DNA of 64,000 bases from NCBI GenBank assembly GCA_037447605.1, contig CM074807.1, positions 3,918,829-3,982,828 of the forward strand. The letters are read 5' to 3'. The position numbers were made by a program, and so were the translations under genes. This document shows positions 3,240-52,600 of the stretch, in pieces (the stretch's first letter is position 1; every line of letters starts with the position of its first letter). This DNA comes from Zygnema circumcarinatum SAG 698-1b (taxonomy: Eukaryota > Plantae > Zygnematophyceae). Under the pieces are notes generated by a model. That model was not told the origin of the DNA, ran no database searches, and saw only the letters and a program-made list of their open reading frames with translations.

Positions 3240-4928
3240 GGCGGCCGACTTTCCCGCAGGGGATTGAGAGGGAGGAGAGCGGGGAGGAAGAGGTAGCAGC
3301 GCGGGCCTATTTGAGGATCCACATCTGATAGATCCGGAGTCCACCCCGTATTTTCCGGAATGTCGGTGGCGTTTACCCTTGGTTCAACGCTTAGTAAACT
3401 GGAGATTTCCTGGTGTGCTACATTTCTGCTACGTGTCACCCAAACGTTCATAGAACACCGAATTGGGCCTGGGAGACGGGGTCTTTTGTTGCTTCTAGAG
3501 CGGCGTTGTTGGTGTTGTTGGGCCTAGAAGCAAAAGGTTCAACTCATAGCTTTTTCCTTTCGTTCCTAGGTCATTTCTAGCGGTTGGTTCCTCGTGGTTC
3601 CCCATGTTGGTTATGTTCATGTACTTGTGATGGCATCGATATGATGAGACCAATGCTCAACCATCCATCCATCCATCCATCCCCCATGGCTATGGCCATG
3701 GAGGACAGATCAACTCTGGTCCCGTGGAATCGGATAGTCATGGTCTCGACGGGGGACATTTCATCGGTCAACGACCCTCCGCCAATCGCGGGGATTTTGG
3801 CGACTTCCAATAACGGATGGATATTTATAACGCAGTGTCGTTCGCAGTAGAATTCCAATCAGAAATTCCAAAAGTCAGGCCGTTTTATAAAACATTTCTA
3901 GAAGGTTTGTACAACAATACGGTCATACAGCTGTACGAAATCCTCTCTGACGGGCAACGCCAATTCGCAGACCGTGCGACCGTACGTGTCGTTCAATGTC
4001 AACGGTCATACGGCCGTTCTAAAAGTGTTCTAGAACTCTGAAACTTTTAGATATTAGAACGTTCTAATTCTGAAACCTAAAACTCCAAAAGTCCCTTGTA
4101 CGGACTTCTTGCCATCCCTACACTTCGAATCGACAACCGTCCGTGCTTTTTCGTACCGTTTACGTCAGCACAATCGAGCCGCCGGGCTTGGACGGACTTT
4201 CCAGGAAGCTCAAACTCTTTGGTGTTCGTACATGTTCGTACGACCCTCCTCGCGTCGACGGGGTTTCGTACGGCACGAGGCGGAATGCTGGAATTCTATT
4301 GGAGGTGACCCGCCGCGCTGGTCCAATCGCAGCTTGCCACGTTAAAATTAATGCTACGTGGCAATTCCCCATTCGCTCATTTCGACCGTGTCCCTCAACG
4401 GGTTCCGTTTACTTGTGCAACAGCCGTAACCAAAATCTGCACGTAACCGACCAATGATAAGACGCCACGTGTACAAACGAGCGAATTGAGCGACGCGATT
4501 GGCTGGGCACTTTGAATTTTTGGAATTTCTCTGGATGGCCGCCGCCTGGGACTTTGCTCCAGGGCAGTGCGCGGCCGGCCGGGCGGGGTCCCGCAGGGCG
4601 CGGAAAGAGACCAGCAGGGAGACTCTCCCTCGGGCCGGCGGGAGGGAGAGGGAGGGAGATAGAGGGAGGGAGAGAGAGGGAGCGGTAGGGAGAGGGAGGA
4701 GGGAGAGAGAGGGAGCGGGAGGCGAGTAGGGAGGGGGGAGGAAGGAGGGAGGTGGGAGGAGAGAGGAGAGGGGGTGGAGGGGGAAGGAGAGAGGAGACGG
4801 GAGGGAGGAGAGAGGAGAGGCGGTGGAGGAGGGAGGAGGGAGGAGAGGGGGTGGAGGAGTGAGGAGAGGGGAGGGGAGGGGAGGAAGGTGCAGGCTTGAA
4901 GCGGTCCCAAGCACCGGGGGCGGGCGCC

Positions 4929-7900: not shown

Positions 7901-8521
7901 CTGTTGAAGAAAGAGCGCGATTTCCGGGCCACTCTTGCAAACCCACAGGGCACCCCCATGAGTAGGTCTCTCACAAACTCCACTAAGGCATACCAGATTA
8001 CCTCTCCTTATGCGGAGCAAAAATCTGCTTCCTTCCCTCCGTCATGGGTTGCTTCCCCTCCAGTCTCTGAGGGAGGCCCTCCCCTTGCCCCTTCTGTGAG
8101 CCGTGTCCCTCCCCCATACCAAGGTGCTCCACCCGCTGCCCCTCCTCCCCCAGGGGAAACCACCACCCTTTCGCTGTGGCAGTCTCCTTCCACAGAAGTG
8201 CCCCCCTCAACAGAGAGACACGAGGAAGGTTTGGATAAAGCCGGAGCTAAGGCTGTGGCCAAGGAGCAGGCCAAGGAAGTGAAAGCTTACAGCATTGCTA
8301 AGGAGGTGGATTTGGCCTTGGGGTCCTTGGAGGGCCTTCGCCAGAAGCTCAAGGAAGAGCAGGCCAGTTTGGATGTCATGGCTCTGGAGGCACGGAAGGC
8401 AGCCATTACTGGTGTAGAACAGGGATTTCCTAACGTGTTTTCAGCACTGACAAACTATGCTGCGGTGGCTTCGCAGATGTATGGTATTCTGCAGTTCCAG
8501 CATGCTAAAGGGTGGAGATAG
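4929..8521 (+). CDS. DUF630/DUF632 domain protein (NRG2/APSR1-like family)
   Basis: Exons 4929-5750, 6004-6248, 7366-8521 splice in frame. N-terminus MGNCASS..AKTRKRAAKEA..AHVAYLESMKIVGNSL is DUF630-like; SEKLWEVLE..YERFR, a coiled coil and LCNDWLRAMDRLPEKAVKDAI are DUF632-like. Confidence 0.85.
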
Positions 8522-16010: not shown

Positions 16011-23685
<7,675 letters not shown>

Positions 23686-28838: not shown

Positions 28839-29645
28839 TGATACGGATCAACGGATCAACTGATCAACCACGTGGTGAACCACCACGGGGTAGTAAAAGG
28901 CCACGCGATGTTTCGCCACTAGTTAGCCCCTCACGCCAGTAGAGGGTTTGATGGAGGAAACGTATAAGGGCGTGAGTCGAACGGTATGGCATTCAATTTG
29001 AAAACCAGCATTGATTATCGCTTCCTCTCTCTCTCTCACCCCCTGAGTCCCCTGTTAGATTGGTATCAGAGCACTTTGTTTCTTTCCTAGCCTAGCACCG
29101 CGGGGTTTCCTGAATGGTGACCACCCACAAACATACAACTACGTAGGTAAGGACGCCGGCCTGTCGAACCTGTCCTCCCCCATTTTCTTTGTCGGTACCC
29201 GCGTAACCGGTGCGCAAAAATTCGGGGGAGCATGTCCCTCTTCCTGCGATCGCTTTGCGACCGACTCCCACGCATCTAGGGACGGGCAACCTCCGGCGGA
29301 CCCTTGGGAGAGCCCTAAGGGTATGACCAACCCGCTGGCGACATGGGATGCCTTGTCTTGCTGGAGGAGCTCGACCCATCGATGGGGAGCAACGCGACAT
29401 CAACCACCGACAACGTGCAGAACAACCGGACAGGCCGGCAAGACCGCCCGATCGTGGATCTAGAGCTTCACCTACAGCGGGGCATGGACGAGATGCGGCG
29501 ACTCCTAAAGGACTTCCGGGAGGACTACCGCTTCGCTTGGGGCGGATGGGACGACCACGTCGCCACCCGCCAACCCTACCGCTCCCCACCAGCCCGCCAC
29601 TGCGCCACAGGCAGCAACACCCCCCGCCTTTTTGGCGGGAGGTAG
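28839..29645 (+). mobile_element. LTR family B 5' end with tRNA-iMet PBS and a degenerate gag-like leader ORF (29343-29645)
   Basis: TGATACGGATCAACGG... ending GTTAGA, followed by TGGTATCAGAGC (29061-29072), the canonical plant iMet PBS. No pol visible. Confidence 0.7.
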
Positions 29646-29760: not shown

Positions 29761-29950
29761 TCCTGATTGGGGTTTTCCTTTCCATCCACATCTACTCTTG
29801 TAAAGGAAAAAGGAAAGAAAATGATGTGGCTGGTCACAATGATCTTTCTTCTTGGTCCTGATTGGGGTTTTCCTTTCCATCCACATCCACTCTTGTAAAG
29901 GAAAAAGGAAAGAAAATGATGTGGCTGGTCACAATGATCTTTTTACTTGG
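29761..29950. repeat. 95-bp tandem duplication
   Basis: tcctgattggggttttcc...gatcttt(c/t)tt..cttgg occurs twice head to tail with about 3 mismatches. Confidence 0.95.
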
Positions 29951-32172: not shown

Positions 32173-32674
32173 TGTCACGGATCAACGGAANNNNNNNNNN
32201 NNNNNNNNNNNNNNNNNNNNNNNNNNNNNNNNNNNNNNNNNNNNNNNNNNNNNNNNNNNNNNNNNNNNNNNNNNNNNNNNNNNNNNNNNNCAGCAAGGCG
32301 CACTTTCGGGAACACGCTGAGGCGTAGATTATCATTCGTTGACGACCTATCCGGAAGGCTCCGTAGTCAGTCAGGCCTCGGTGGGCAGTTGGCCCGATCG
32401 AGGCTACATCCTTTGCTAAGACTCAAGATCCCCATTGTCGGTGTTAAGTAGATGGGATGTCAGTGATGCTTCTTTGTCTTTTAGTGAAATTTGTATTTGT
32501 ATTTGCTGTGTGGTTTTGTTGTCTTGTTCTTCTTTCTTCTTTTTCCTTCCTCTTGATTCTGACAACGGAATCTTGGTAAGAGAGAGAGAGAGTTCCGTAC
32601 GTAGATAGAGAGAGTTAGAGAGAAAGAGTCTTGCTAGCGATAGCATTTAGGCGTCCCCTTCGGCCAGTTAGACA
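32173..32674 (+). mobile_element. LTR-B-related LTR, probably solo (contains a 100-N gap)
   Basis: Begins TGTCACGGATCAACGG and ends GTCCCCTT..GTTAGACA, matching both ends of the 28839 LTR. No clear TSD or PBS. Confidence 0.55.
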
Positions 32675-32854
32675 AAAGATTCCGGTGGGAAGACAATTTC
32701 ATTGTAATGACATTCCCCAATAACCAGCTGGTACGAGGGTAGGGGGTTCCCTAAAATACCACCTTTATCTAAGTTGTGTCCTGTTTTCCCTCTGCTGTCA
32801 CTATGCCAAGCCCCTATCTTGCTCTATCCTGCCTTGCATTGCTCTCAATGACCA

Positions 32855-33415
32855 ATGATCACTAGAAGCCTAGCTAAGAGACTAGCCGAGGAGAGGACAG
32901 GGGAGGAGGGTCCCCAAGGAAGGGCTCTTTGCGCATCAAGTCCAGCCGCCGGTGGGAACGTCTTCAGAATCCCTACGTCTTCCGCTGCGCGTACCTCTGA
33001 ATCCCCCGGATCCTGGCTCTATGCTGCAGGCAGACCCACAGCACCACCCCAACCCTACGTCAGTTTCGGCACGGACACGCGAGTGGCCGTACAGCACCTG
33101 CAGCTAGCTCAGCAGTCTTTGTTTAACCCCACTTATCTTGTGCTACACTGCATTGCCACCACGTGTCCATTGCCAAGTGAGACATGTCCGTACATAGGGT
33201 ACAGTCCAACTTTTCACACGTGCGATATCGAAGACTTCTTACCACGTGGTATGCCCACCGGGTTTTACGCTATGTCGGCGTCTTGGAATTCCCCCACCGA
33301 CATCCACGCTCACACTAGCGACAAAAGGTGCCGACATTTTCGTGGCATCTGCCATGCGGTTGGTCGGTTGGTTTTGGACGAGCTCTTTTCCACTCCTAAA
33401 GTTGACCCTTTTTGA
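32855..33415 (+). other. 186-aa intronless ORF of unknown origin, possibly retroelement-derived
   Basis: Open frame just downstream of an LTR; begins MITRS; no recognised domain. Confidence 0.25.
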
Positions 33416-33699
33416 CTTAAGGTCTTTCCTTAGCCCGGCAGGAGTCTAAAAGCAGCTCTGTGCTGAAGTTTGAGGGAAGGATAGGCAGCAATTGTAACAA
33501 GGTGTAGCATCAGGAAAGAAATGTCACATCAATTCTTTTTTGGGTGGGAGGGGGGGAGGGAGTCGTGCCGGGAAGACTTTTCTGCAAAAAAGCTATTTGA
33601 ATAATTGTTCAGATTTGTGAATAAAATGTGGTGCTGGCTTCTGTGTGAAAAATGTGGCCTTTTCGTGCAAACTGTGACCAGTATTTCTCCTCTCCTCTC

Positions 33700-34110
33700 G
33701 ACACCTCTCCCTCTCCTCCTCCTCTCTCTTCTCCTTCCCCCTCCCGCTTCTTCGACTGCTCCTCTCCCTCTCCTCCTTCTCCCTCCCGCGTCTTTGACTG
33801 CTCCTCTCCCTCTCCTCCTCTCTCTCTTTTCCTTCCCCCTCCTGCTTATTTGACTGCTCCTCTCCCTCTCCCTCTCCTGCTCTCTCTCTTCTCCTTCTCC
33901 CTCCAGCTTCTTCGACTGCTCCTCTCCCTCTCCTCCTCTCTCCTCTCCTTCCCCCTCCCGCTTCTTCGACTGCTCCTCTCCCTCTCCTCCTCTCACTCTT
34001 CTCCTTCCCACTCCCGCTTATTCGACTGCTTCTCTCCCTCTCCTCCTCTCTCTTCCCCTTTCCTATCCCGCTCCTTCGACTGCTCCTCTCCCTCTCCCTC
34101 TCCTTCAACA
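33700..34110. repeat. CT-rich minisatellite (about 50-60 bp unit, about 7 copies)
   Basis: Recurrent tt(c/t)gactgct(c)ctctccctctcc core. Confidence 0.85.
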
Positions 34111-34480
34111 TCCCCTTTCAGTTTTAAATACAAAGCGAAATATCATCAATGAAACCTTTAAAAAGTGATAAAAGCCACTCACGAGCTGGAAAATAATCTT
34201 GCATTGTGAAAAATTGGCTGCACAATCTACTTCCTTCCAGACTTCCTTCTAAGCCAAACTCCTGTACTCCTTGGAATGTGCTTCTTCTATACATGGGTCA
34301 ACCGAGAACATCAATTTCACACTGTTCTTCCGATCTTATAAGTTGACGAATGAGTGAGTTGATTCAACCCAGCTAGCTGGTTTAACACTACCAAAACTAC
34401 TGACAGAATCAGAGCCATTCTCTAACAATATACTGTACAATTCTTCCTTCTTCCTAATGAGATTTTTTTGGTCCCTCTCT

Positions 34481-35467
34481 CTACTGTTCTCTATCACCTC
34501 CAGACTCTTCATTTGAGGCTAATTGGGGCCATGTGTAATCTACAGAGCGCCTGAAAAAATGAAATTCTTTGCCCGACTTAAAAATGAAGGGATGTGCAGA
34601 AATGAAGGGGCGATGTATGGAGAACGCTCGATGTTATCTCATTTATGGAGTAGCAGAGCTCGGCCTGCACATCCAAACCACTCACGGAAAATGTCAATTC
34701 AATCATTAATAAATTTTCAAAAAATGTTCTCCTAACTTTGAAAAAGCTACAAAACCAACCCAACTGCCCTTGTGTACAAATCAGTTCCCTCTCCATCTCC
34801 CTCTCCCTCTCTCTCTCTCCCTCTCCCTCTCCCAAAAGCCAACCCTTACCCAATAGAGGAAGAGCCTTCTCCCATGCTGCGCAAGCGCAAAACGAGGCCC
34901 CATCCAAAGATAACTTTCGCCGTCACGTCGAGCACTGCATAGCACGCGACCTCCGCATCGACACTGATGGTGTTCGAGCCCTCTCCAAAGCCCCACACGA
35001 CCGGGTAAAGTAGCCATACGAGGATCAAAAGAGTGGCCAGACCGTCGTACAGGGCACCTGCATGAATGAGGGCAGGAAGAGAGAGGGGAGGGAGACGTTA
35101 GTGGGCGTTGGGGAGGGGGAGGAGGGAGGGAGAGAAGGACAGGGAGAGGGAGAGGGAGGGGGAGGAAACGGGTTGGAAATAGTGGGGATAGGAGAGGGGA
35201 GGCGGTGGGGAAGGATGAAGAGGGAGGGGTCATAGAGGAGAGAAAAGAGAGATGGGAAGTCGCGGAAGGAGGGATCAACTATGGACAAAGCATCGAGAGA
35301 GTTTGGGAAGGGGAAGGGGCAGGAGACGACGAGAGAGAAAGTGAGGCAGAACCAGGAGATGCAAGTTGCGTAAATTAGCAAGAGTTTAGGAGACGCAAAA
35401 GAAAAGATTAAAATGACTGTCAGAGAGCTAGAAAGAAAGATACAAAGAAAGAGAGATACAAAGAGAG

Positions 35468-35550
<83 letters not shown>

Positions 35551-36759
35551 CTCACCCGACGCCTTGCTTCGTGCGAACACCTGTCGGCGCACAGAAATGG
35601 CGAGGTCCCAGAATACGAGCACCATGAAGAGGCAGCCGAAGCCGTACCATCCCCACCTCGTGGTTCCCGAGGTGAGCGCCGCGAATAGCCCCGTAAGGAT
35701 CATTCCGACGTCGAAGAAGAGGAGCCGCGCGGTGTGGTCGAAGGAGGGCACTCCCAAAAGGACGAGGTCGAGGAGGAGGAGGGGCGTGGTCAGGGCCCAG
35801 TCCACGTACCGCGCGTACATGAGCTCGCGGTAGGAGGTGCTCCCGGCCACGGGGACAAGGAGGGACCCGCCGCCGGTGGCCTGCAAGGGAAGGGGAGGGG
35901 GAAGGGTGAGGGAGGGGGAGGGGAGGGGAGGGGAGGGGAGGGGAGGGGAGGGAGGGGAGGGGAGGGGAGGGGAGGGGAGGGGAGGGAGGGAGGGGAGGGG
36001 AGGGGGAGGGGAGGGGAGGGGGGGGGAGGGGGGAGGGGAGGGGAGGGGAGGGGGAGGGAAGGGAGATGGGAATGAGAGGACAGCGAGAGGGAGGGAAGGG
36101 CGAGGAGGGGAGAGGAGGTGGAGGGGATGGGGAGAGAGGGAGGGGGAGGGGCGGAGGGAGGGGAGGGAGGGGAGGGAGGGGAGGGGAGGGGAGGGAGGGA
36201 GGGGAGGGGAGGGAGGGGAGGGAGGGGAGGGGAGGGAGGGGAGGGGAGGGAGGGGAGGGGGAGGGAAGGGAGATGGGAATGAGAGGACAGCGAGAGGGAG
36301 GGGAAGGGCGAGGAGGGGAGAGGAGGTGGAGGGGATGGGGAGAGAGGGAGGGGGGAGGGGGCGGAGGGAGGGGGAGGAAGGATGAGGGGGGGAAGAAGAT
36401 AGGGAGGGAGGGAGGAGGGAGGGGGGGGCGTGGAGAAGGGAAGTGAGAGAAGGAGAGAGAGAAGAGGCAGGATCAGCAATTCACCATGGAGTAGTAGGCG
36501 AGGGTAGCGATGGCCAGAATTGCAAATGTGGCATCTGCAACATGAAAAGGACAAAAAAAGGAAGATTGTAAGAAAAAGACAAGAACAAAATCGTCATGGA
36601 GGTGAAGTTGGAGAGAAATAGCAGGGGTTTGCATTACAAAGGCTCTCATAGATGCACCATGTGAGCGGAATTGCTACAACGACCATTTTTTTTTAACTTT
36701 GAAATTGATAGGAAACGAGAGAAAGTAATAGACGAAGGAGGAAGAGTGTGTGAGAGAGA

Positions 36760-36820
<61 letters not shown>

Positions 36821-36974
36821 AGAGAAGCTTACAGTAGTGCATGCGGTCGTCCAGCGGCGCGGAGCCCGGGCGGGAGTATGCCAAGCAGGCCATCGCTATC
36901 GCATTGAACAGAAATATCGCGAACACCACCCACAAGATGATCCGCCCACCCTCGTCCACGGTCTCGAACGCCAT
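34481..36974 (-). CDS. Type-1 (microbial) rhodopsin, bacteriorhodopsin-like DTD proton pump
   Basis: Exons 36974-36833, 36534-36485, 35880-35556, 35057-34850 (or to the stop at 34846) and putative 34550-34481 splice in phase. Helix C YARYVDWALTTPLLLLDL, helix F VWLLYPVVW, helix G LDVTAKVIFG (Schiff-base Lys). Confidence 0.93.
35885..36430. repeat. G-rich (GGGGA)n-type tract with an internal ~110-bp duplication in rhodopsin intron 2
   Basis: Dense G3-G6 runs; duplicated blocks at about 36051-36160 and 36261-36370. Confidence 0.85.
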
Positions 36975-37191
36975 CTCTCCCTCTCTCACTCTCTCTCCTT
37001 TATCTCTCCCCTTTTCTCTCTCTCGCTCCTCTCTCTCTTTCTTTACCCTCTGTCTCTCCTTCTCCCTCTCTCCCTCTTTATTTCTCTTTCTCTCTCTCTC
37101 TCGCTCTCCTTCTCTCCCTCACCCCTCCCTCCGCCTTTAAAGAGCGGCCCAAGCCCCCGACGACCCCATGTCGGTCTGCGCCGCCGACCGA

Positions 37192-37236
37192 GCCACGTGG
37201 CGTGCTCGGGAGTTGCGGCGCCCTGTGTCACGTGGC
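37192..37236 (-). promoter_or_regulatory. G-box/ABRE pair upstream of the rhodopsin
   Basis: GCCACGTGGC (37192-37201) and TCACGTGGC (37228-37236), about 220-260 bp upstream of the ATG. Confidence 0.6.
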
Positions 37237-37780
37237 GTGAGCTTACTCGTTGATGGCGAGTCCCTGTTCGGCGCTCTCTGATTGGTTGGCCCGATTTGGT
37301 CGATGAGACCCATAAGGACCCATCTTGATTTTCACTGGTCTTGTGACGAATAGGAACGGCTCGTTAGACGTGCGAGAAGCTGACTAGGCCTGATGGATAG
37401 ACGGACATTCTAGCCAGTACGATCTGTACTTTATGGTATAATACCGTACATTTACTGTACGAACGATCCATGCTTGCCTTAACTGGGGGCCCGTTAATTG
37501 TCACAGCTTCCTTTTTAGTCTGGTTTAGTCAGTAACCAGCCTTAGTCAAGAGAGATCGTTCAGTCACCACATTCAGTTAGGAATTGTGTACTAAATAGCT
37601 TCCCCCCGCTAGAGAGTTTCTATAGGTTCAACATATCCATGTTATAGTTCGCAGTGACATGTGGTTAAGTGCGACTGGATTTAATTTAGTCAGTTGGCTA
37701 GCTACTCTTGACCAAACATTGCACAACAATGTAATCTGAGATTCTCACACGTGGGCTTACAAACTTCCAGTTTTCATCTC

Positions 37781-37782
37781 CC

Positions 37783-37828
<46 letters not shown>

Positions 37829-37829
37829 T
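37781..37829. repeat. (CCAGTTT)7 heptamer tandem repeat
   Basis: Seven consecutive units, followed by degenerate copies. Confidence 0.95.
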
Positions 37830-37967
37830 TCGGTTTTCAGTTTTCAGTTTGCAGACTCAAACCAGTTTCCAGCCAGAAGCCAGGGCACCTGGTTTTTTTG
37901 GGCATGATAAACCTGGGGGAGATTTTCCACAAGAGCCGCAGAACCTTTTCACAGATCGGACCATTAG

Positions 37968-38810
37968 ACAAACCAGTCGACTGGTTGGCAACCAGTGGTT
38001 GCGGACCGAAACAACCATTCGACTGGTTGCCAACCAGTGGCTCAGGACCGAAACAACCATTCGACTGGTTTGGAACCGGTGAGATGCCGCACGGTTGGCA
38101 ACCATTCGACTGGTTGCCAACCAGTGCCGGTCGAAACAACCATTCATTTGGTTGCGAACCAGTGGCGCAGGACTGAAACAACCATTCGACTGGTTTCCAC
38201 AGACGGTGAATCCAATGGTTGGCAACCATTGAATTTCTGAAATTATGCCTATTTGCAAAAATGGGTCATATGTGTTTTTTTGTGGGTTGCCAACCGTTGA
38301 CAACTAGTGTAACAAGCCTGATGCGTACGGATCCGTACCGTCGAGTCGTATGATTGTACGGGGATTCTGTACGGCCGAACCGTAATAGTTTTCTCCGAAA
38401 CGCCGACGGCATTTTGGTAGCTGTAGCGTTCAGTTCGCTACAACTAGTGATTTAATGGTTGCCAACCATTTGATTAAATGGATATAACCATTCGACTGGT
38501 TGCCAACCAGTGTCGCCGGATCGAAACAACCATTCGACTGGTTGCCAACCAGTGGCATCCACTGGTTCCAAACCAGTCGACTGGTTGCCAACCAGTGGTT
38601 GCGGACCGAAACAACCATTCGACTGGTTGCCAACCAGTGGATGCCACTGGTTGACAACCATTCGACTGGTTTGGAACCAGTGGATGCCACTGGTTGGCAA
38701 CCAGTCGACTGGTTTGGAACCAGTGGATGCCACTGGTTGGCAACCAGTCGACTGGTTGCCAACCAGTAGACGTCCAACCATTGCCATCCAATGGTTGTCC
38801 AATGGTTGCC
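37968..38810. repeat. Two-block palindromic repeat array built from ACTGGTT/AACCAGT half-sites
   Basis: 12 copies of CGACTGGTT; 37971-38040 and 38571-38640 are 70-bp copies with one mismatch. Confidence 0.9.
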
Positions 38811-39298
38811 GATCCACTGGTCCGAACTGTGAACCTTTTCACAAACGCGTAACTGATGACGTCATCAGCGCGAGCCTCGAATGGAAAATATACTACTTTC
38901 AATTTGCGAGATTTCAGGATTTTCCCTCGGGATATTGCCTCAAAAAAAATAAAAAATAAATAAAAAAGGAAAAAAATCGACAAGAATCTCACTAACTTTG
39001 CGCAAAGTGGATAGAAAAGCAAACAGAAATGTTACACTTTTTGCCTCCTCCCTCTCCCTCTCCCTCTCCCTCTCCCTCTCCCTCCCCTCTCCCTCTCCCT
39101 CTCCTCTCCCTCTCCCTCTCCCTCNNNNNNNNNNTCCCTCTCCCTCTCCCTCTCCCTCTCCCTCTCCCTCTCCCTCTCCCTCTCCCCATCCCCATTCAAA
39201 CCCTTCAAAACGTCTACAAACTGCCCGAGTGAGTGCCCGAGTGCAGGCTTGAAGACTCAAAATTTCCAATCTGCCCCTACCCCTAGTCCTAGCCCTCC

Positions 39299-42200
39299 CT
39301 AGCTGTAGCCGTAGCCCCCTCCTCCTCCTCCTCCTCCTCCTCCTCCTCCGTAGCCTCCATACCCTCCCGCAGCGCTGTGAGAAAACCTGCACAAGTAGAA
39401 AAGCCAACCCTAAAAAACATCAGATTAAGTTTTCTTCTTGTCTCTGCCATGCCTCCTGCTCCCTCAAGCAGTGATTTTTCACAGCCTTTGAACAGGGAGT
39501 GGGTATGACAATGAGCTCTTTTATAAGGTTTTAACGAAGCTTATTGAACATTATATATTCCATTATGTTCAGACATACCGGCAATTAGGTCGAAGGCAGC
39601 GCCCAGCCAGGAAATCGCGGCATACCTGCACAGAAATTTTCCACTCCCAAAATCAGGAAAGTAGAAGTATAGGAGTAGGCAGTAGAGACTAAGCATTTGA
39701 AGGAGAGAGAAGAGAAGCTGTGCCAAAACATGGGTTGTCCCTCATGCAACGGAGAGCAGGTTCCATGCAAAAGTCAACGGAACATACCTCCTGATATGAG
39801 TACGGATCACCCGTTCCATGAGAATACCTGTTGCAAGAAAACCCTCAAAATGAGATGTTGTTGTCTCCTTCATTGGACGCAAATAACAAGAAAACAGCAC
39901 AAAAGAAATCTCATACTCTGAGAATCAGGCAGGCAGGCAGGCAGGCAGTAGGAGTTCACCCCTGCTTCTAAGAAGACTTGTCAACAAGAACAGTAGATAC
40001 AAGTAAATCCAATATGGGGAGCGGGAGAGGACAAAGGAAGAGAGAGAAAGGGAGAGAGGAAAAAGGGGCAATATACGGAAGAGAAAGTTGAAAAAAAATG
40101 GTGGGTGCGAAGCATGGGGCAGGGACGGGGTGGGAAAGGACGAGGGAGAGGAAGAGGGAGAGCGACAGGGAGAGGGAAAGTGAGCGCGACAGAGGGAGAG
40201 AGAGATGGGGAAGCAGAATATTTCCAGCACCCTACTCCCACCCCCCACCTGCAAGCTGCTCCACGGTGACATCTCCCCGCGATAAAGTCACGACAAATTT
40301 CCTGCGACTGCTGCGACCCCCCTCCCCACCCCTGCCACTTTCAATCAGTCCTCGCCTGTTCGTTTGACGCAGTAAACGAACGGACCACTATGTCTCCCAG
40401 AGAGAGGGAGAGAGAGAGAGAGACAGAGAGAGAGAGAGAGACAGAGAGAGGCCGACATGTCCCTAGCCGTTAGACGCTCCTGCTGCGCTGCCGCCTCCGC
40501 AAGCGCTGCGAGATCAGAGGCTTAAGCCCTACCTTTAAGCCCCGGAGGATGGAGGGGTCCATCTCTGTCCATCTTTGTTTGGCTCGAATACATCATCCCC
40601 CGAGGTCTGCTCACGTTGACTCAGTTGACTAAGAAGACTCAGTTGACTAAGGGAGCCTCTCTCCAGAGGCCCCCCCCGGTGGTACAGATAGCTACTCACA
40701 CTGACCGACTCTAGCAAGCACTGGGAAGCCACACTGCAGGAGGGAGAGCAAACAGAGAGGGAGAAGGAGAGAAGAAGTTGTACAATAGTTTAGCGCAGAA
40801 CCCCTCCCCTCCCCCCCCCTTCCTCATCCTTTCATTCTTTTCCCCGTTTTTTGGGAAACAAGCAGTGGTCAGGACTATCTTAAAAAACAGCAAACTTTAA
40901 CCAAAGCAGGCACCCTCATGTCTGAACCCACCCTGCAGAGAAAAGGCGAGGCAAAAGTTAGCAAGTGGGAGGCAAAGCCATGCGCTTTTCTACCTCTTCC
41001 TTCCGTTCAAGAAGCCCAGAAGATGACCCCTACTCAGAAATAGTAACTTTTCAGACTCCAAGAAGCTACAAAGAAGCATTGGTTGGATACATACATATGA
41101 ACCTGCTCCGTAATAGCCGAAACCATAGCCGCCGGCCATCCAGGCAGACTGTCACAGAACATAAAACGAACTCGGTCAAATTGAACATGTTTGGACACAT
41201 TAGTCATCCAGAGAGACATCGATGAAAACCCATGAACCGAACTACCGTGCATTCAAAGTGTCCTTAAGACATCGACTATAGCAAAAAGTAGCGAACACAT
41301 CAATTCCTTTCTAGAAAATCTCGTTTTCGCCAAGAAGCTCTCTTCCATGACAACTAGAGAGTTACTGTCATATTACATTTTTGGAAACTAGCAGTCCTGT
41401 ATTCATCATTGTGCGCAAGAACAAGTGCCTTTGAGCTACTTAAAAAATGTTCCCGACACAGCTACAGACTCGAAAAACTCATTCTCAACCAAAAAGAAAA
41501 AAACTAATCGACCTTGACAAAGAGCCACACACGTCATGCATTCCTCCAGAAACTTTACAAACCCCATTTCACACGTTCAACACTCTTAAAGAATAATCAC
41601 TCACCTGGTCCCAGGATGATGCAGGATGCATCATTCCTGGTGCTCCATACGCTCCATATGCAGAATACCCATTAGGGTCCGCTGCATATGCAGCATAGAC
41701 ATTAGCATCATATGAATTCGGACCATAGCTCCCATACCCATTAGGGTCGGCAGCATAGGCTCCCTCCTCTCCCCCATACTGCTGCCCCCATGAGCCCCCC
41801 TCCAGAGGCAGGGGTACCTCCTCATAATCCTCGTCGTCCTCCTCCTCCTCCTCTGCCTCCTCTTCTCCTCTCTCTTCTCTCTCACTCTTCTGCTCTCCTT
41901 CTTCTCGCCGTCCCCCTCTACCAGCTGGACTCCTGCTGCGGCTGCGACCCCTCCCGGCTTTCTTTTTCCGTGGCGACAGCTGTCGCTCGCCTGCAGCATC
42001 AGCGTGTCTGCCGTTTTCCGTGCGAGTTCCCTCTTCAGCAGAACTGCTTCCAGAAGCTGCTGCCGCTGCGGCAGCCATGGCTTCCCCAATGGAAGAAATT
42101 GAGAGAGGAACAACACCCGGAAGTAAGGGAGGTGGAGGAGGGAGCGGAAGGTTCTCTATTTCCTCTGTCGCAGCTGTGGGAGTGGGAGAAGTCTGGTTCC

Positions 42201-42681
42201 CACCTGGCACTACCACTGCTGCATTTTCAATACCAGGAGGAGCTTCAAAAGGAGAAGGAGCCTGATCACCATATTCAGCTCTCTCATACCCTTCTGCCTG
42301 ACCTCCATACGCAGCAGAATGGTAGCCAGCAGCACCTCCATGCTCATATCCCTCATACCCCTCCTGGCCATTGCCTCCCCCTGCATAGCCTGCAGCTTCC
42401 CCTACTCCATAGCCTTCTGCTCCTTCACCGTAGCTGCTATGGCCGGCATCGTAGCTGTCTCCATAGCCAGCTCCATTGCTTTCATTGAAGGAGCCGTTGT
42501 ATGCAGAAGGAGGAGCGGGCGAGCGAGAGGGAGAAGAAGCAGACTGTAATGCCTCGTCTTGTTCCGCCTGCTGCTCAGCTGCATACGCATCCTCAGTGTA
42601 AGCAGCGGCTTCAGCGGCAATGGCTTCATCACTCGCATGCTCTGCTTCAGTGGAAGCAGCCTTCGCCTCGTCGTTAGCCAT
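39299..42681 (-). CDS. Tandem CCCH zinc-finger (probable RNA-binding) protein with a long acidic, Gly/Tyr/Pro-rich N-terminus
   Basis: Large first exon (42681 to about 41605); small 3' exons splice to ICRDFIAGRCHRGAACRYSH (C-x7-C-x5-C-x3-H) and VCRDFLAGRCLRPNCRFSH (C-x7-C-x4-C-x3-H), then a GGY tail. Middle exons uncertain. Confidence 0.75.
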
Positions 42682-44331
42682 GGCTCCTCCTGAACACTTC
42701 GAAAGGACCGCCGCTTGCAACCGGGGAGGGAGGGAAAGGAAGCTGCTCAAAAAATACCCCTTTTTTCTAACCTTCTGTTCTGTTCCTAAGGACTACTGGA
42801 AAGCATGGGGATGGAGGGAGAGGGAGCTGGGGGAGGGAGAGGACCAACCCTAATATGATGAGGAGCGGCTCAGCCCTAAATAAGGGACTTATTGTGGAGT
42901 ATCCACCAATAATGGCGTGCCACGTGTACACAATTTTGAGTAAGTGAATCGTGTCAATCTAAATTTTTAGACATTTCACGAAGGAAAATAAAATCAAAAA
43001 TCAAAATCAGTACATACATTGCGTAATATAGTATTTAAGTTGTAACTTACAGAGTATTGGGTTCTTAAATAAATCTTGAAATTCACACGGACACGGACTT
43101 CTGAAGTTTAGTTGAGCCAAGTTGTTGATCTTGATTCCTTGAGTGGATCTGCCGATCCACTTGTTTCAGCTGCTGCCTCCGTGGCTCCCTCCGCAGGCAG
43201 TCAGTGCCCTCTGCCCCGCCTCGTCCTGCATTCGAACATTTCTCACCCAATTTTTTTTTTTTCAGTAAATCCACTCACTAATTTTCTCTCCAGAGAGTAA
43301 TTCTATCTCAAGAACAATTCCTCCTCTTTTTTCATAAATTTCTCATATTATTTTCCACGAAAAAATGGCAGTGATGCAGTTCCGACCTACGAGCCGCAAG
43401 GCGCGTTTATGCTCTCCCTGTTTCTGTGCTTTTAATTTTTTTTTGATAAATTTTCAATGTGGGTCGGCTCAAGCCCCAACATTTACTCAACTTTTGATCG
43501 GAGCAAATGACATTTGCTTGGGCCCCTTCATCCTAAAAATTTGAAAACCCTAAAAAGTGCAGCTGGAAAACTCCTGTGGAAAGACGAGGAATTGGGTTCT
43601 GATTTATTTCTGAATCAGTTGTAAACGCGTGTTTTGGCATGCAGGCTTTCTCTTTATTCAAACCGGTGCATGCCCACAAGTGGGTATGGAGATGGGGTCT
43701 CCGATTCCAAGAGTTGGGTCCGCAATTGAATTCTTGCAGTAAGTTTTTCGTCTCTTTAAACATCATTTAAACCCCATTATTCCAATTCATGGGGTGCGTT
43801 CTTAACAGCCGGGAGTCAGAGAACCAGAATTTATGCAGGAACCATAAACGAGGAATCATGGAGATTTACGAACTTGGCCTGTCCTCGTCAAGATTATCGG
43901 AATGTTATTTTTAGGGCTCTTTTCTAGACTAGGCCATTCGATTTTTGTAAGCGGTTGCTTCAGGGAATGTTACAGTTGTCTTTATGCTCTCGCACCACCT
44001 GTCCGTCTTTCCCTCCCTTTCCCTCATTATCTCCCTCTCGCACTCCCTCTCCCACTCCCTCTCCCTCCCTTTCTTGTTTCCTCGCCCACCTTCTCTCTCT
44101 TTTGCAATTCCTCTCCCCCTTCCTCATCTCCCTCCCTTAAGCAGTCCCGGGTATCTCCCTCTCCCTCTCCCTCTCCCTCTCCCTCTCTCTCCCTTCCTCA
44201 CACCCTCCTTTTCAACGGCTCAAATAGCTCCGCTTGTCCGTCTTCCATGGCCCACGGCTGCCGCCCCATCCATCCTGCTGGCTCGCAGATGATGGACTTG
44301 GACACATGCCCCCCTTCATGCAGACCATGTG

Positions 44332-49685: not shown

Positions 49686-52600
49686 ATGGTGATGGGCCTC
49701 AATGTGGTGCGGGGCGTGGCCCAGGACATGCAGTGCCTCTCCTCGCTGTGGTTCAAGAAGATCAAGGGGACCTCGCACAAAGAGCGCCTGGAGTCTTTCT
49801 ACGGACCTCAAGCTCATGCTTGTAAGGCACATTGAGGGTCCAGCACTGCTTGGATGGGATGGATGAAAGAGGATCTGTTGTAGGTGTTTGTTGGATCTGA
49901 ATCTGATTTGTTTCTCCAGCACCTGGAAATCTAAACGCATAGGATCTGAGTCCTGCGCAGATGACAGGTTCCGGAAGGATTTTCTGCACGGAAGGAGGCC
50001 CATGCTTGCAGCCTGCGCAGCGCGGCTCCGAGGATCATCAGGGCTTGTGTGGGTGGATCTTGGAGGGGGAACAGCTGAGAACGTAGACATGATGTCAGAA
50101 TACATAGATCTTAGTTCTTTTGACAAGATTTATGTTGTTGATATTACTCCCTCCCTTTGCGAAGTCGCTCGGAAGAAAGTTCATCTCCGTGGGTGGAAGA
50201 ATGTAGTCATAGTCGAAGGTGACGCGTGTACCTTTAAACCGAAGGAGATGGCGAATCTGGTTACCTTTTCTTATTCTTTATCAAGTAAGTCATACGACAG
50301 GGCAAAACGATTTTTTGGATGGCTAAAACAGTCCAGTTCAGCTTATGAAATGCAGCATTTGTCCAAGGAAGGCCGATGGGTGTTTTGTCTGCGATCTTCC
50401 TTTACTTGCTCTGGAGATGGTTAAAGGTGCCATTTTGCCTCATATTTCGTTTGCAACTTTTTGGTTGCTGCCCTGCAGTGATCCCCCCATTCATGGATGC
50501 CGTCGACGCTGGTATTTCTTACCTGGATGAAGATGGCATCCTCGGAATTGCTGACTTCTTCACATCCTCAAAGTTTGATCTTCCAAACCGGCAACACACT
50601 TACTCGCAGCGATGGTTTTGGAGATCAGTATTTGATTTTGATGGCATTGATCTGGGCCCTGAAAGGCGCCAATACTTGGAGCATAAGTTGGAGCCGGGTA
50701 AGTACTAATCAAGTTTGGTTCGAGAAATTATCTGATGTACAAAATCCAGCTAAGGCATTGGTATCTCAGTTTAGAGTGCGGCTTGGGGAATTTTATTTGT
50801 TTTTGGCAGTTGGCGGTTTTTGTGGAGGCTTTCTGGCTTGCTCAGTAGTTGCGCCTTTGATTTTAGCAACGATTTTTTCCTGTGTATTAACGTCGTCGTA
50901 TTGCAGGTTGGCTGTTTGCCCTTCTTAAAAAGTTCCAATTATTTCCTTCACACAGACTCTAATTTCATCAATGCACGGCAGCTGAACTTTACCAAAACAT
51001 TGAATGCTGCGCAGTTTACGAGTACAATGGAAGGGGTAAAATTCCATATGTTCCGTATCTTCGTGCACCGTTCTACATTTGGATTGGTCGGCACCGGGGC
51101 AACACCAGTAAGGAAATAAAGTGACCCTTCTTCTTGAAAGGATTCGGCTGCTTGTTGGATTAATGCCCTTGGGGCCGTTAAATCGTTACGCTTGCCTTTT
51201 TTTGGTCATTGTCTTTAGCTATGATCATCAATTTTGAGATGCTGTATGTTCCTACATTTACCTGACTTAGCTGTAACGCCTGTCTTCAGAAATTGATATA
51301 ACACGCTTTCCATCTCGAGCTTCGGATGAATTCGACTACAAACGACCTCCTGGATTTCCACCCACATTCTTATATTCCCTTTCATGGGAGGACCCTCGCG
51401 AAGATGACAAAGTTTTGGATGTGAATGAAAAAGACACAATTCTCACTCTTACATCTGGTGGCTGTAATGCCCTAGATCTTGTCTTGCAGGTCCGCTATTC
51501 TGGCCCAGACCTAGAGAAAGTCGAAGCTATCATTGAGGGAGGGCGTTTTGCACCGTATTTTCTTGCTTCCTTCGCATGTCTTGATTTCTACAGTGCTGTT
51601 TGTCGCTTCACATCCAAGTGTACCGTGGTTGCATCATTATCGTTGCCACGGTGTGCTGAGATGATATGTTCATCTGTTTGTGTTGAGAACGGGAACGAAG
51701 GGACGGGATGTGGTTGACAGGGAGCTGGCCAAGTTGTTGGAGTGGATATCAACCCTGCACAGAGCTACCTCCTCGAACTAAAGCGGGCAGCAGTCATGAG
51801 GTATAGCCGACTTCCCTTCCTCGCTATGCCAATTTTGTGAGCTCGTTCCATCTTGTTCATTCAGCACCAAACTCCCCTTTTTCTTTTCCTCGTTGCAAAT
51901 AACTACAGGAAGTGGTGAAGCGGAATTTTGAATAGTGTTAATGCCTTTTCCCATAGACGGACATTCCAGCAAAGGCATTTGCTGTGTATAAGGCTGGCAG
52001 AAAGATTTTGGACTAATTGCTCAACAGTGTACTTGTTTTGGTCTTGCAGACTTCCATATGACGATGTGTGGCAGATGTTTGGTGAGGGCACTCATTCGAA
52101 CTTTCCCAAGCTGCTGGAAAGGGAGCTAGGCCCTTTCTTGAGTCAGGGAGCTGTCAACTTCTGGTGTGTACCTGACGATTGAGATTGTTTTACGCATCAA
52201 GCTCATAAAAGCAGTGAAATGAAAGTTTTAAGGACTTGCCCAAAGAAGATGAAGTACATCTGAAAACTGAAAACCAGAATTTTAGCGGTGCCTTTGCTAC
52301 GGATGCATTTGCACATGATCTGAAGTTGTGCTCTATAATTTTGGACGAAGTGAATATATTATTCGAAAATACTGGTTCAGTTATATCTGCCGAACAAGGA
52401 GCAGATATGGAACTGGGTTTTGTATTCAAGTCTTTGGCCTTCGGCCATTTAACTATGCCATCTCGCCGTCTGCTTTTGCAGGAGACAAAAATCCTACTAC
52501 TTCAAGAACGGCATCTACTACCATGGTCAGTTAGCTAGCCATGATTTGTTTTACTTCAAGTTAGGAGGCAGCGCCGTGCAAAAATGCGATTCCTCTTTGA

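What the first reader, a model, noticed from the sequence alone, without database searches (positions are those of the whole stretch)
34481..36974. Host-integrated, spliced proton-pump rhodopsin in an apparent streptophyte alga
Seen in sequence: a 242- or 264-aa seven-helix protein retaining the bacteriorhodopsin equivalents T46, Y57, R82, D85, W86, T89, D96, D115, M118, W182, Y185, P186, W189, D212, K216 and both proton-release glutamates (GEG and DAEV). Established: DTD plus release group marks outward H+ pumps such as Leptosphaeria rhodopsin, Acetabularia ARI/II and Coccomyxa CsR, whereas the streptophyte algal rhodopsins I know of are mainly channelrhodopsins (Mesostigma, Klebsormidium). 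GT-AG introns filled with host-type CT tracts and a plant G-box promoter argue against contamination. Inference: retinal-based light-driven proton pumping in a close relative of land plants. There is no transit or signal peptide, so plasma membrane or endomembrane is likely. Also a candidate optogenetic tool. I cannot verify whether it is already described.
Basis: partly seen in the sequence, partly recalled or inferred. Interest (0 to 1): 0.82.

Follow-up and report, generated by a model that had tools for sequence, protein, structure and literature searches.

The report
Proton-pump rhodopsin gene in streptophyte alga
This green alga from the lineage that includes land plants carries an intact, four-exon nuclear gene for a bacteriorhodopsin-type protein that most likely uses green light to pump protons out across a membrane, a kind of gene I could not find described for this group, although expression and activity remain untested.

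Summary
A minus-strand gene (36974..34846) has four exons of 142, 50, 325 and 212 nt with GT-AG introns. It encodes a 242-aa seven-helix type-1 rhodopsin.

- **Family and residues:** Both large exons match Pfam Bac_rhodopsin. The best solved-structure matches are 7bmh, 6gyh, 5awz and 3am6, which I recall as the Leptosphaeria, Coccomyxa and Acetabularia pumps.
- **Gene structure:** All three introns match, in column and phase, introns of an unnamed algal genomic homologue (L018). Two match introns of Coccomyxa and Elliptochloris. None matches the fungal genes examined. This is a green-lineage gene, not a fungal contaminant.
- **Host setting:** The upstream G-box motif occurs 18 times in the window against 0.86 expected. 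The 10-N gap on the gene's upstream side lies inside a microsatellite that continues across it. A DUF630/DUF632 gene marks the scaffold as streptophyte.
- **Caveats:** I found no transcript evidence. The protein tree is unresolved, and the closest relative is only 52% identical. GC3 is 0.79 against 0.38-0.59 in neighbours, but homologues elsewhere show the same pattern. Zygnematophyte identity rests on earlier unchecked notes.

Verdict: a new member of a known kind, of moderate interest.

The parts
36833..36974 (-). Exon 1 (142 nt): ATG at 36974, helix A and the start of helix B. It ends in phase 1 inside the Tyr48 codon.
   Evidence: Translation. Donor act|GTAAGC. The N-terminus aligns with the start of Coccomyxa CsR. 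No upstream in-frame ATG.
36535..36832 (-). Intron 1 (298 nt, GT-AG, phase 1) containing a (CT)n tract.
   Evidence: The position and phase are identical in L018, Coccomyxa and Elliptochloris.
36485..36534 (-). Exon 2, a 50-nt mini-exon encoding helix B (ATFAILAIATLAYYSM), with T50 and Y61 (BR T46 and Y57).
   Evidence: An exon of exactly 50 nt with the same flanking phases exists in L018, Coccomyxa CsR and Elliptochloris.
35881..36484 (-). Intron 2 (604 nt, GT-AG, phase 0). It is 94% pyrimidine on the sense strand, mostly a (CCCCT)n array, with a CTCAC branch-like site about 27 nt before the AG.
   Evidence: AGGGG period-5 array at 35886-36377. The position and phase are shared with L018, Coccomyxa and Elliptochloris.
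35556..35880 (-). Exon 3 (325 nt): helices C-E with R88, D91, W92, T95, D102 (BR R82, D85, W86, T89, D96), D121 and M124. It ends in phase 1 inside the Gly173 codon.
   Evidence: Translation. Pfam PF01036 E=5e-20. PDB 7bmh E=2e-21, 6gyh E=1e-19, 5awz E=5e-17.
35058..35555 (-). Intron 3 (498 nt, GT-AG, phase 1) with (CT)n and CCCTCT tracts.
   Evidence: It shares column and phase with intron 3 of the L018 gene and lies 4 nt from a Coccomyxa intron.
34846..35057 (-). Exon 4 (212 nt, including the TAA stop at 34846-34848): helices F-G with W187, Y190, P191, W194, E198, E208, D216 and the Schiff-base Lys220 (codon 34915-34917).
   Evidence: Translation. Pfam E=3e-11. PDB 6gyh E=3e-15. Residue table.
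34481..34850 (-). Optional alternative 3' end: donor GG|GTAAGG overlapping the stop, a 299-nt intron (34551-34849) and exon 5 (34481-34550). This gives a 264-aa product with a different 23-aa tail.
   Evidence: Reconstructed. The tail shows no convincing similarity to relatives' tails. Unresolved without RNA data.
36975..37240 (-). Putative 5' UTR and promoter: a CT-rich leader (36975-37120) and G-box cores, one palindromic GCCACGTGGC at 37192-37201 and CACGTGGC at 37229-37236, 218-262 nt upstream of the ATG.
   Evidence: CACGTGGC occurs 18 times in the window against 0.86 expected, also upstream of other putative genes. That it functions as a promoter is inferred.

Best explanation
This is an intact nuclear gene of a streptophyte green alga. 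It encodes a 242-aa (or 264-aa) type-1 rhodopsin of the eukaryotic bacteriorhodopsin-like proton-pump clade.

**Inferred mechanism, by homology with bacteriorhodopsin and Coccomyxa CsR**
1. All-trans retinal binds as a protonated Schiff base to Lys220.
2. After green-light isomerisation the proton passes to Asp91. The counter-ion complex is Asp91 and Asp216, held by Arg88 and Tyr61.
3. Arg88 swings towards the Glu198/Glu208 release group and a proton leaves on the extracellular or luminal side.
4. The Schiff base is reprotonated from Asp102, whose pKa is held high by Thr50, and Asp102 then reloads from the cytoplasm.
5. The net result is one proton moved outward per photon.

Leu at the BR-93 position and the match to CsR suggest absorption near 540 nm, in the gap left by chlorophyll.

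**Shown:** gene structure, fold family, conservation of every key residue, green-lineage intron pattern, host-like promoter and repeat context.

**Inferred:** transcription, retinal supply, pumping, spectrum and membrane location. With no presequence, and helix A acting as a signal anchor, the plasma membrane or an endomembrane is likely.
For: - The exon model gives an uninterrupted 729-nt CDS with GT-AG introns.
- Pfam Bac_rhodopsin matches both large exons.
- The best solved-structure matches are 7bmh, 6gyh, 5awz and 3am6. I recall these as Leptosphaeria LR, Coccomyxa CsR and Acetabularia ARI/ARII; the tool output does not name the organisms.
- 17 of 17 functional residues are identical to CsR and to a haloarchaeal BR-type protein, and the junctions fall in gap-free conserved columns.
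- CsR with these same residues is an outward H+ pump in oocytes (PMC4657025).
- There are seven hydrophobic segments.
- Three of three intron positions and phases are shared with the algal L018 gene, and two of three with Coccomyxa and Elliptochloris. None is shared with Mixia, Aaosphaeria, L019 or L021. A crude chance estimate is 3e-7 and 4e-4.
- The G-box is enriched in the window and present upstream.
- The gap at 39125 lies inside a CTCCCT array that continues across it.
- The DUF630 ORF's nearest Atlas clusters are recorded as Streptophyta.
Against: - No transcript or protein identical to this gene exists in the 15-billion-protein collection, so splicing and expression are unverified.
- No retinal-forming enzyme gene (Blh/BCD or RPE65-type) was detected in the window, although two homologues elsewhere have one next door.
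- GC3 of 0.79 differs from neighbouring host coding segments at 0.38-0.59, with an RSCU correlation of about 0. This is mitigated because L018, Coccomyxa and Elliptochloris rhodopsin genes show the same excess over their surroundings.
- A 100-N scaffold gap lies 2.6 kb beyond the 3' end of the gene.
- The 242-aa and 264-aa C-termini cannot be distinguished.
Confidence: 0.72

Rival explanations
1. The gene is real and expressed, but the protein is not an energy-converting pump. It would instead be a slow-cycling photosensor (as proposed for Neurospora NOP-1-type fungal opsins) or a leaky or channel-like proton conductor.
For: The eukaryotic clade contains non-pumping members (own knowledge). 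Single substitutions convert CsR into a channel (PMC4657025). The short tail and unknown location leave a signalling role open.
Against: The proton donor is Asp (DTD), not the Glu that NOP-1 carries by my recollection. R88 and Y61, whose change makes CsR leaky, are intact. The release glutamates and the D115 equivalent are present. Helix B has none of the glutamates typical of channelrhodopsins. No transducer or enzyme domain is fused.
Confidence: 0.1
2. The gene is a silent or recently inactivated relic: an intact-looking ORF that is no longer transcribed or correctly spliced, for example because microsatellite expansion has filled its introns.
For: No matching transcript-derived protein exists in public collections, although earlier notes call other genes of this genome expressed. 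Intron 2 is a 604-nt, 94% pyrimidine array, which might impair transcription or splicing.
Against: There are no stops or frameshifts in 729 nt. All 17 functional residues are retained. GC3 is strongly biased as in active homologues. Splice sites are canonical, with a branch-like CTCAC and polypyrimidine tracts. G-box elements lie upstream. Absence from assemblies may only reflect the conditions sampled.
Confidence: 0.12
3. The gene is contaminant or mis-scaffolded DNA from another organism (a trebouxiophyte, another alga or a fungus), or a very recent transfer, rather than a long-resident host gene.
For: The gene sits on a 6.8-kb block bounded by N gaps. Its codon usage differs from neighbours. 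The tree cannot reject grouping with Coccomyxa (p-AU 0.15) or with fungi (p-AU 0.52).
Against: - The gap at 39125 is inside a (CTCCCT)n array that continues on both sides, and the gap at 45604 is likewise inside a CCT-rich array. The block therefore runs on into 39-64 kb.
- The same purine/pyrimidine tracts and the enriched G-box occur in the gene's introns, UTRs and promoter and in other blocks.
- The protein is only 45% identical to CsR and at most 44% to the fungal proteins in the best-hit list.
- The fungal genes examined share none of its introns.
- High GC3 is a family trait.
Confidence: 0.05

Closest known systems
Coccomyxa subellipsoidea rhodopsin CsR (PDB 6gyh; P0247)
   Same: - 45% identity over the whole length.
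- Identical residues at all 17 functional positions, and a similar N-terminus.
- Two introns at identical column and phase, with the same 50-nt mini-exon.
- High GC3.
- CsR is an outward H+ pump with an action maximum near 545 nm (PMC4657025).
   Different: CsR comes from a chlorophyte (Trebouxiophyceae). It has eight introns and a C-terminal extension of about 60 aa. The window protein is 242 aa with three introns, and it falls in a different, unnamed clade in the tree.
Unnamed environmental/RNA-seq clade: P0053, P0204, P0205, P0206 (JGI metatranscriptomes) and P0207 (ERR12684108/110)
   Same: These are the nearest sequences anywhere in the collections: 46-53% identity, E down to 1e-73. They group with the window protein at UFBoot 92 / SH-aLRT 90. 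All key residues are conserved. P0207 has similar codon usage (RSCU r=0.79).
   Different: Identity is only about 50%. These proteins carry N-terminal extensions of about 20 aa and a conserved ...VEGGSYSSLSTNA tail that the window protein lacks. Their source organisms are unknown, and only transcripts are available, so their introns cannot be compared.
L018 gene / P0059 (unnamed eukaryotic metagenome contig, JGI 3300060285)
   Same: All three window introns are conserved in position and phase, and the 50-nt mini-exon is the same. Identity is 43%. GC3 is high relative to neighbours.
   Different: L018 has two further introns. It also has a Blh-type beta-carotene dioxygenase gene (PF15461) about 3.4 kb away in divergent orientation. 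No such gene is detectable in the window.
Fungal Leptosphaeria-type rhodopsins (PDB 7bmh; Aaosphaeria P0220, Mixia P0060)
   Same: 7bmh is the best PDB hit for exon 3 (E=2e-21). These proteins have the DTD motif and a release group, and about 40% identity.
   Different: No shared intron positions. They have longer N- and C-termini and form separate clades in the tree, although the backbone is unresolved.
Bacteriorhodopsin (Halobacterium) and haloarchaeal relatives (P0048)
   Same: The same helix C motif (RYxDWxxTTPLLLLDL), the same WxxYPxxW and DxxxK motifs, and both release glutamates.
   Different: The window gene is a eukaryotic nuclear gene with spliceosomal introns. Identity is about 35-40%, and there is a one-residue shorter loop between W189 and E194 (read directly from the sequence).

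Membership tests
Microbial (type-1) rhodopsin, Pfam PF01036 | Sequence match to the family profile above the curated threshold | tested here: met
   Exon 3 scores 72.3 bits and exon 4 scores 43.6 bits against a cut-off of 24.6.
Microbial (type-1) rhodopsin, Pfam PF01036 | Seven transmembrane helices with the retinal-binding Lys in helix G | tested here: met
   Seven hydrophobic segments. Lys220 lies in DVTAK and aligns with CsR K215 / BR K216.
Microbial (type-1) rhodopsin, Pfam PF01036 | Covalent binding of all-trans retinal and a photocycle | not testable with these tools
   This needs expression with retinal and spectroscopy.
BR-like outward proton pump (DTD motif) | Asp acceptor, Thr, and Asp donor at BR positions 85/89/96 | tested here: met
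   D91, T95 and D102 in RYVDWALTTPLLLLDL.
BR-like outward proton pump (DTD motif) | Counter-ion and shuttle residues R82, Y57, D212, and the donor partner T46 | tested here: met
   R88, Y61, D216 and T50. Their roles in CsR are given in PMC4657025.
BR-like outward proton pump (DTD motif) | Proton-release pair E194/E204 | tested here: met
   E198 (GEG) and E208 (DAEV) align with CsR E193/E203.
BR-like outward proton pump (DTD motif) | Light-driven outward proton transport | not testable with these tools
   This needs photocurrent or pH measurements.
Eukaryotic fungal/green-algal pump clade (LR, CsR, ARI/II) | Closest solved and named relatives belong to this clade, and the protein lies inside the clade in a tree rooted on haloarchaeal sequences | tested here: met
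   PDB order is 7bmh, 6gyh, 5awz. The window protein lies inside the eukaryotic clade, which has 96/95 support. Relationships within the clade are unresolved.
Green-lineage subgroup of that clade (gene-structure criterion) | Shared spliceosomal intron positions and phases, including the 50-nt helix-B mini-exon | tested here: met
   3/3 shared with L018 and 2/3 with Coccomyxa and Elliptochloris. None shared with the two fungal genes and the two fungal-type loci examined.
Channelrhodopsins (the streptophyte rhodopsins known so far) | Glutamate-rich helix B and Lys at the Y57 position (K132 in C1C2) | tested here: not met
   Helix B (HYYATFAILAIATLAYYSM) has no Glu, and Tyr is at the Y57 position. 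The Lys criterion comes from PMC4657025.
Opsin-related proteins / NOP-1-like sensory fungal opsins | Loss of the Schiff-base Lys (ORPs), or Glu instead of Asp at the donor position (NOP-1; own knowledge) | tested here: not met
   Lys220 and Asp102 are present.

The most novel reading that the evidence does not exclude
The gene may represent an old Viridiplantae-wide lineage of retinal proton pumps. Its introns would predate the split of chlorophytes and streptophytes, it would have persisted in the algal relatives of land plants, and it would have been lost in embryophytes. Where it is highly expressed, as the abundant rhodopsin in ice-dwelling zygnematophytes suggests (PMC12420790), it would provide a second, chlorophyll-independent route for capturing green light to energise membranes. 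The unnamed P0053/P0207 clade would then be its zygnematophyte orthologues.
Probability: 0.3. Interest if true: 0.7.

Novelty: new member of a known kind. Interest (0 to 1): 0.52.

Why it matters
Land plants are generally held to lack type-1 rhodopsins, and the streptophyte algal rhodopsins studied so far are channelrhodopsins. An intact bacteriorhodopsin-type pump gene in a streptophyte alga has several consequences.

- It means retinal-based light energy capture reached far up the lineage leading to plants, which dates its loss more precisely.
- The conserved introns give a marker for tracing the gene's history that is independent of the poorly resolved protein tree.
- Together with the metaproteomic report of an abundant rhodopsin in glacier-ice streptophytes, it suggests a testable physiological role: membrane energisation or pH control under high light, cold or nutrient limitation.
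- At 242 aa, with no long tails, the protein is also a compact eukaryotic pump candidate for optogenetic silencing.

Tried and rejected
1. **Own transcript or protein.** I searched with the exon-3 ORF and with exon 3 against 1.84 billion representatives. Nothing was above 58% identity over exon 3. A search with P0053 found no closer relative and no named streptophyte.
2. **Source organisms of the nearest relatives.** I tried run and sample accessions (SRR30673770-805, ERR12684108/110, JGI 3300050363 and others) through paper searches and the Greenland paper's text and supplements. None could be resolved.
3. **Naming the host.** A homology search with the DUF632 ORF returned nothing, and an Atlas query on that ORF was uninformative. 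The DUF630 ORF worked.
4. **Composition.** Tetranucleotide comparison of the scaffold blocks was not informative for blocks this short.
5. **Retinal-forming genes in the window.** tblastn with the L018 BCD protein and tblastx with the partial Elliptochloris RPE65 gene gave no significant hit. Pfam scans of 29 ORFs found none.
6. **Topology tests.** They could not reject placing the window clade with trebouxiophytes or with fungi, or the window protein with Coccomyxa, so I do not use the tree to argue origin.
7. **Exact-match lookup of a host protein.** I dropped the plan to find this organism's RNA-seq runs because the candidate ORF (41572-42792) ends at a splice donor.
8. **Metagenome scan.** The scan for genomic copies of the P0053 clade found only transcript-sized contigs.
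9. **Structure prediction.** I left this out. The spliced protein has no reference form, and the tools do not take it read through stops. The fold assignment rests on sequence.
Full report
**1. What is there**

Reading 33.8-37.6 kb shows a minus-strand gene. The ATG is at 36974, and four coding segments translate cleanly. Joined in a script, the exons are 36974..36833, 36534..36485, 35880..35556 and 35057..34846. They give a 729-nt in-frame CDS of 242 aa.

The donors are GTAAGC, GTGAAT and GTGAGG, and each acceptor is a pyrimidine tract followed by GCAG. The introns (298, 604 and 498 nt) are 75-94% pyrimidine on the sense strand and are largely (CT)n, (CCCCT)n and CCCTCT arrays. The CDS has 61% GC and GC3 of 0.79.

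tblastn with the product and five relatives finds only these four exons in the window, with no second copy or fragment. Its tail does not resemble the tails of relatives, so the choice needs RNA data.

**2. Family and fold**

- Exon 3 (108 aa) and exon 4 (69 aa) match Pfam Bac_rhodopsin at E=5e-20 and 3e-11.
- Against solved structures, the best matches for exon 3 are 7bmh, 6gyh and 5awz, followed by archaerhodopsins and bacteriorhodopsin. For exon 4, 6gyh is first and 3am6 second. I recall these entries as Leptosphaeria LR, Coccomyxa CsR and Acetabularia ARI/ARII; the tool output gives generic molecule names.
- Hydropathy gives seven hydrophobic segments.
- I could not fold the spliced protein because it has no reference form.

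**3. Gene model support**

The complete spliced product aligns colinearly with P0053 (276 aa) over residues 10-240 at 52% identity, E=1e-73. In a 15-sequence alignment, all three junctions fall in gap-free conserved columns: MHY|YATF, YYSM|ATGG and KASG|ALY. The N-terminus (MAFETVDEGG) lines up with the start of CsR (MAVHQIGEGG), so the 5' end is complete and leaves no room for a presequence.

**4. Functional residues**

At the columns corresponding to BR T46, Y57, R82, D85, W86, T89, D96, D115, M118, W182, Y185, P186, W189, E194, E204, D212 and K216, the window protein has T50, Y61, R88, D91, W92, T95, D102, D121, M124, W187, Y190, P191, W194, E198, E208, D216 and K220. These are identical to CsR and to a haloarchaeal BR-type rhodopsin.

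PMC4657025 gives the same residue map for CsR and shows by electrophysiology that CsR is an outward proton pump. It also shows that R83 and Y57 prevent passive leak. Helix B lacks the glutamates of channelrhodopsins. The most likely function is therefore light-driven outward proton pumping by the BR mechanism. This is inference from conservation, not a measurement.

**5. Relatives**

The nearest sequences among about 15 billion proteins are unnamed:
- P0053, P0204, P0205 and P0206 from a series of JGI metatranscriptomes;
- P0207 from two ENA RNA-seq runs;
- P0055 from 36 consecutive SRA runs.

Identity to the window protein is 46-53%. Named relatives, at about 35-45%, are fungal opsins and trebouxiophyte rhodopsins (Coccomyxa, Symbiochloris, Elliptochloris). 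No named streptophyte or land-plant protein appears among the 120 best hits. The gene's own product is absent from the collection, so I have no evidence of expression.

**6. Phylogeny**

A careful ML tree places the window protein with P0207 plus the P0053 group (UFBoot 92, SH-aLRT 90). This lies inside a well-supported eukaryotic clade (96/95). The backbone among the window clade, the trebouxiophyte clade, two fungal clades and smaller groups is a polytomy. AU tests do not reject joining the window clade to trebouxiophytes (p=0.26) or to fungi (p=0.52), nor the window protein to Coccomyxa (p=0.15). The protein is too short to settle origin.

**7. Intron positions, the more informative evidence**

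I mapped exact exon structures by requiring perfect translation across GT-AG junctions.

| Gene | Introns (codon, phase) |
|---|---|
| Window | (48,1), (65,0), (173,1) |
| Coccomyxa CsR | eight introns |
| Elliptochloris | eight introns |
| L018 (genomic copy of P0059) | (45,1), (62,0), (171,1), (207,0), (256,2) |
| Mixia | eight introns |
| Aaosphaeria | two introns |

Projected on the alignment:
- The window's first two introns coincide in column and phase with introns of Coccomyxa, Elliptochloris and L018. All four genes have a helix-B mini-exon of exactly 50 nt.
- The third intron coincides with L018's third and lies 4 nt from a Coccomyxa intron.
- The two fungal genes share none. Two further unnamed loci (L019, L021) have the fungal pattern, with an intron inside YP|VW.
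- A crude estimate of chance coincidence is about 3e-7 for 3/3 with L018 and 4e-4 for at least 2/3 with Coccomyxa.

The gene therefore belongs to a green-lineage set with inherited introns. This argues against fungal contamination or bacterial transfer. It is compatible with vertical descent, or with eukaryote-to-eukaryote transfer followed by long residence.

**8. Host integration**

The window holds six N runs. The gene lies on an ungapped block, 32291-39124, between a 100-N gap and a 10-N gap.

- The 10-N gap at 39125 sits inside a (CTCCCT)n array that continues on both sides, and the gap at 45604 sits inside a CCT-rich array. Both look like unresolved repeat lengths, so the block is effectively continuous with 39-64 kb. 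That stretch holds a CCCH/RS-type gene and a BTA1-like betaine-lipid synthase gene, with a methyltransferase domain plus DUF3419.
- The same purine/pyrimidine tracts fill the rhodopsin's introns and UTRs and other blocks.
- The G-box core CACGTGGC occurs 18 times in the window against 0.86 expected (maximum 4 in 100 shuffles). At least one copy occurs in every block. Copies lie upstream of the DUF630 gene, the 41.6-42.8 kb gene and the BTA1-like gene, and three lie 218-262 nt upstream of the rhodopsin ATG.
- For lineage, the ORF at 4896-5771 matches DUF630 above threshold and is followed by a DUF632 fragment. Its nearest Atlas clusters (score 0.94) are DUF630+DUF632 families recorded as Streptophyta.
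- Earlier notes of this scan call the genome a zygnematophyte. I did not verify that level.

**9. Codon-usage caveat**

GC3 of the rhodopsin (0.79) is well above the Pfam-aligned coding segments of neighbours (0.38-0.59), and the RSCU correlation is about 0. The same excess is seen in L018 (0.72 against 0.50-0.59 for its neighbours), Coccomyxa (0.72) and Elliptochloris (0.85), with introns near 0.5. The homologous transcripts also have GC3 of 0.63-0.78. I read this as a family trait, possibly linked to expression, rather than a sign of recent foreign origin.

**10. Retinal supply**

In Elliptochloris the rhodopsin is head-to-head with an RPE65-family oxygenase gene. In L018 a Blh-type dioxygenase (PF15461) lies about 3.4 kb away in divergent orientation. 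Nothing comparable is detectable in this window, so the source of retinal here is open.

**11. Literature**

Ten searches found no paper describing a pump-type rhodopsin in Zygnematophyceae or other streptophyte algae. The zygnematophyte genome papers listed do not contain the word rhodopsin. Two surveys of algal rhodopsins mention only Klebsormidium channel-type proteins among streptophytes. The one precedent is PMC12420790, which reports an InterPro-identified rhodopsin making up more than 0.1% of the streptophyte (Ancylonema-dominated) proteome on Greenland ice. The library misses many subscription papers, so earlier description cannot be excluded.

**12. Verdict**

The gene is a new lineage member of the well-known eukaryotic BR-like pump family, not a new kind of system. 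Its value lies in where it occurs, in the conserved-intron evidence for an old green-lineage gene, and in the testable idea of retinal phototrophy in streptophyte algae. Expression, activity, location and the exact species remain to be shown.

Noticed in passing
window, 18 sites: 4464, 14073/75, 22116, 26943/45, 31393, 31422, 31801, 37192/94, 37229, 42919, 48671/73, 48731/33, 49471: The G-box core CACGTGGC is about 20-fold over-represented (18 found against 0.86 expected, maximum 4 in shuffles). It tends to lie just upstream of putative gene starts, often as the palindrome GCCACGTGGC. It looks like a general promoter element of this genome.
   Followed up: partly
L023:1-1441 (-) and L023:1501-4988 (+), Elliptochloris bilobata GCA_040144335.1: The rhodopsin gene is head-to-head, about 60 nt apart, with an RPE65-family carotenoid cleavage oxygenase gene. 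This may be a retinal-synthesis plus opsin gene pair in a trebouxiophyte.
   Followed up: partly
L018:4870-5424 (-) and L018:8832-12161 (+), JGI metagenome 3300060285: An unnamed eukaryotic contig carries a rhodopsin (the genomic copy of P0059) about 3.4 kb from a divergently oriented PF15461 (Blh-type beta-carotene 15,15'-dioxygenase) gene. This is a second case of opsin plus retinal-enzyme adjacency, using a different enzyme family.
   Followed up: partly
window 37971-38199 and 38486-38771: Two arrays of a 42-43-nt tandem repeat containing the palindrome AACCAGTCGACTGGTT lie 1-1.8 kb upstream of the rhodopsin gene. They produce long spurious ORFs on both strands.
   Followed up: no
window 33759-34097: A CT-rich minisatellite (56-nt unit, 6 copies, also readable as a 110-nt unit) with a conserved GCTTCTTCGACTG core lies about 0.75 kb downstream of the rhodopsin stop codon.
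   Followed up: no
window 35886-36377 (intron 2 of the rhodopsin): About 98 copies of AGGGG lie on the + strand, which is the template strand for this gene. That makes a long G-run array in the template and a 94% pyrimidine intron in the pre-mRNA. It might form G-quadruplex or i-motif structures and affect transcription.
   Followed up: no
window 18592-19600: About 1 kb of nearly uninterrupted (AG)n microsatellite. It accounts for the extreme GC and AT skew of the 18-20 kb bin.
   Followed up: no
window 49867-51714 (+): A BTA1-like betaine-lipid synthase gene, with a methyltransferase exon (49867-50421) followed by a DUF3419 exon (51277-51714). By my recollection this gene is known from algae and non-seed plants.
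   Followed up: partly
window 4896-8518 (+) and 977-1465 (-): A DUF630/DUF632 gene whose product starts MGNCASS (a possible N-myristoylation signal), and an FAD_binding_4 exon resembling L-galactono-1,4-lactone dehydrogenase. Both are plant-type host genes on the same scaffold.
   Followed up: partly
window 39984-42681 (-): A gene whose first exon (from ATG 42681 to the donor WDQ|gtgagt near 41606) encodes a low-complexity Gly/Tyr/Ala- and Arg/Ser/Glu-rich protein. A CCCH zinc-finger exon lies further downstream (39984-40340). A G-box lies about 240 nt upstream of the ATG.
   Followed up: no
window 29761-29950: A 95-nt direct tandem duplication at 97% identity.
   Followed up: no
window 29319-29642 (+): The only other ORF in the window with rhodopsin-like codon statistics (GC1/2/3 = 0.68/0.49/0.78). 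It has no Pfam match and may be an exon of an unannotated gene.
   Followed up: no
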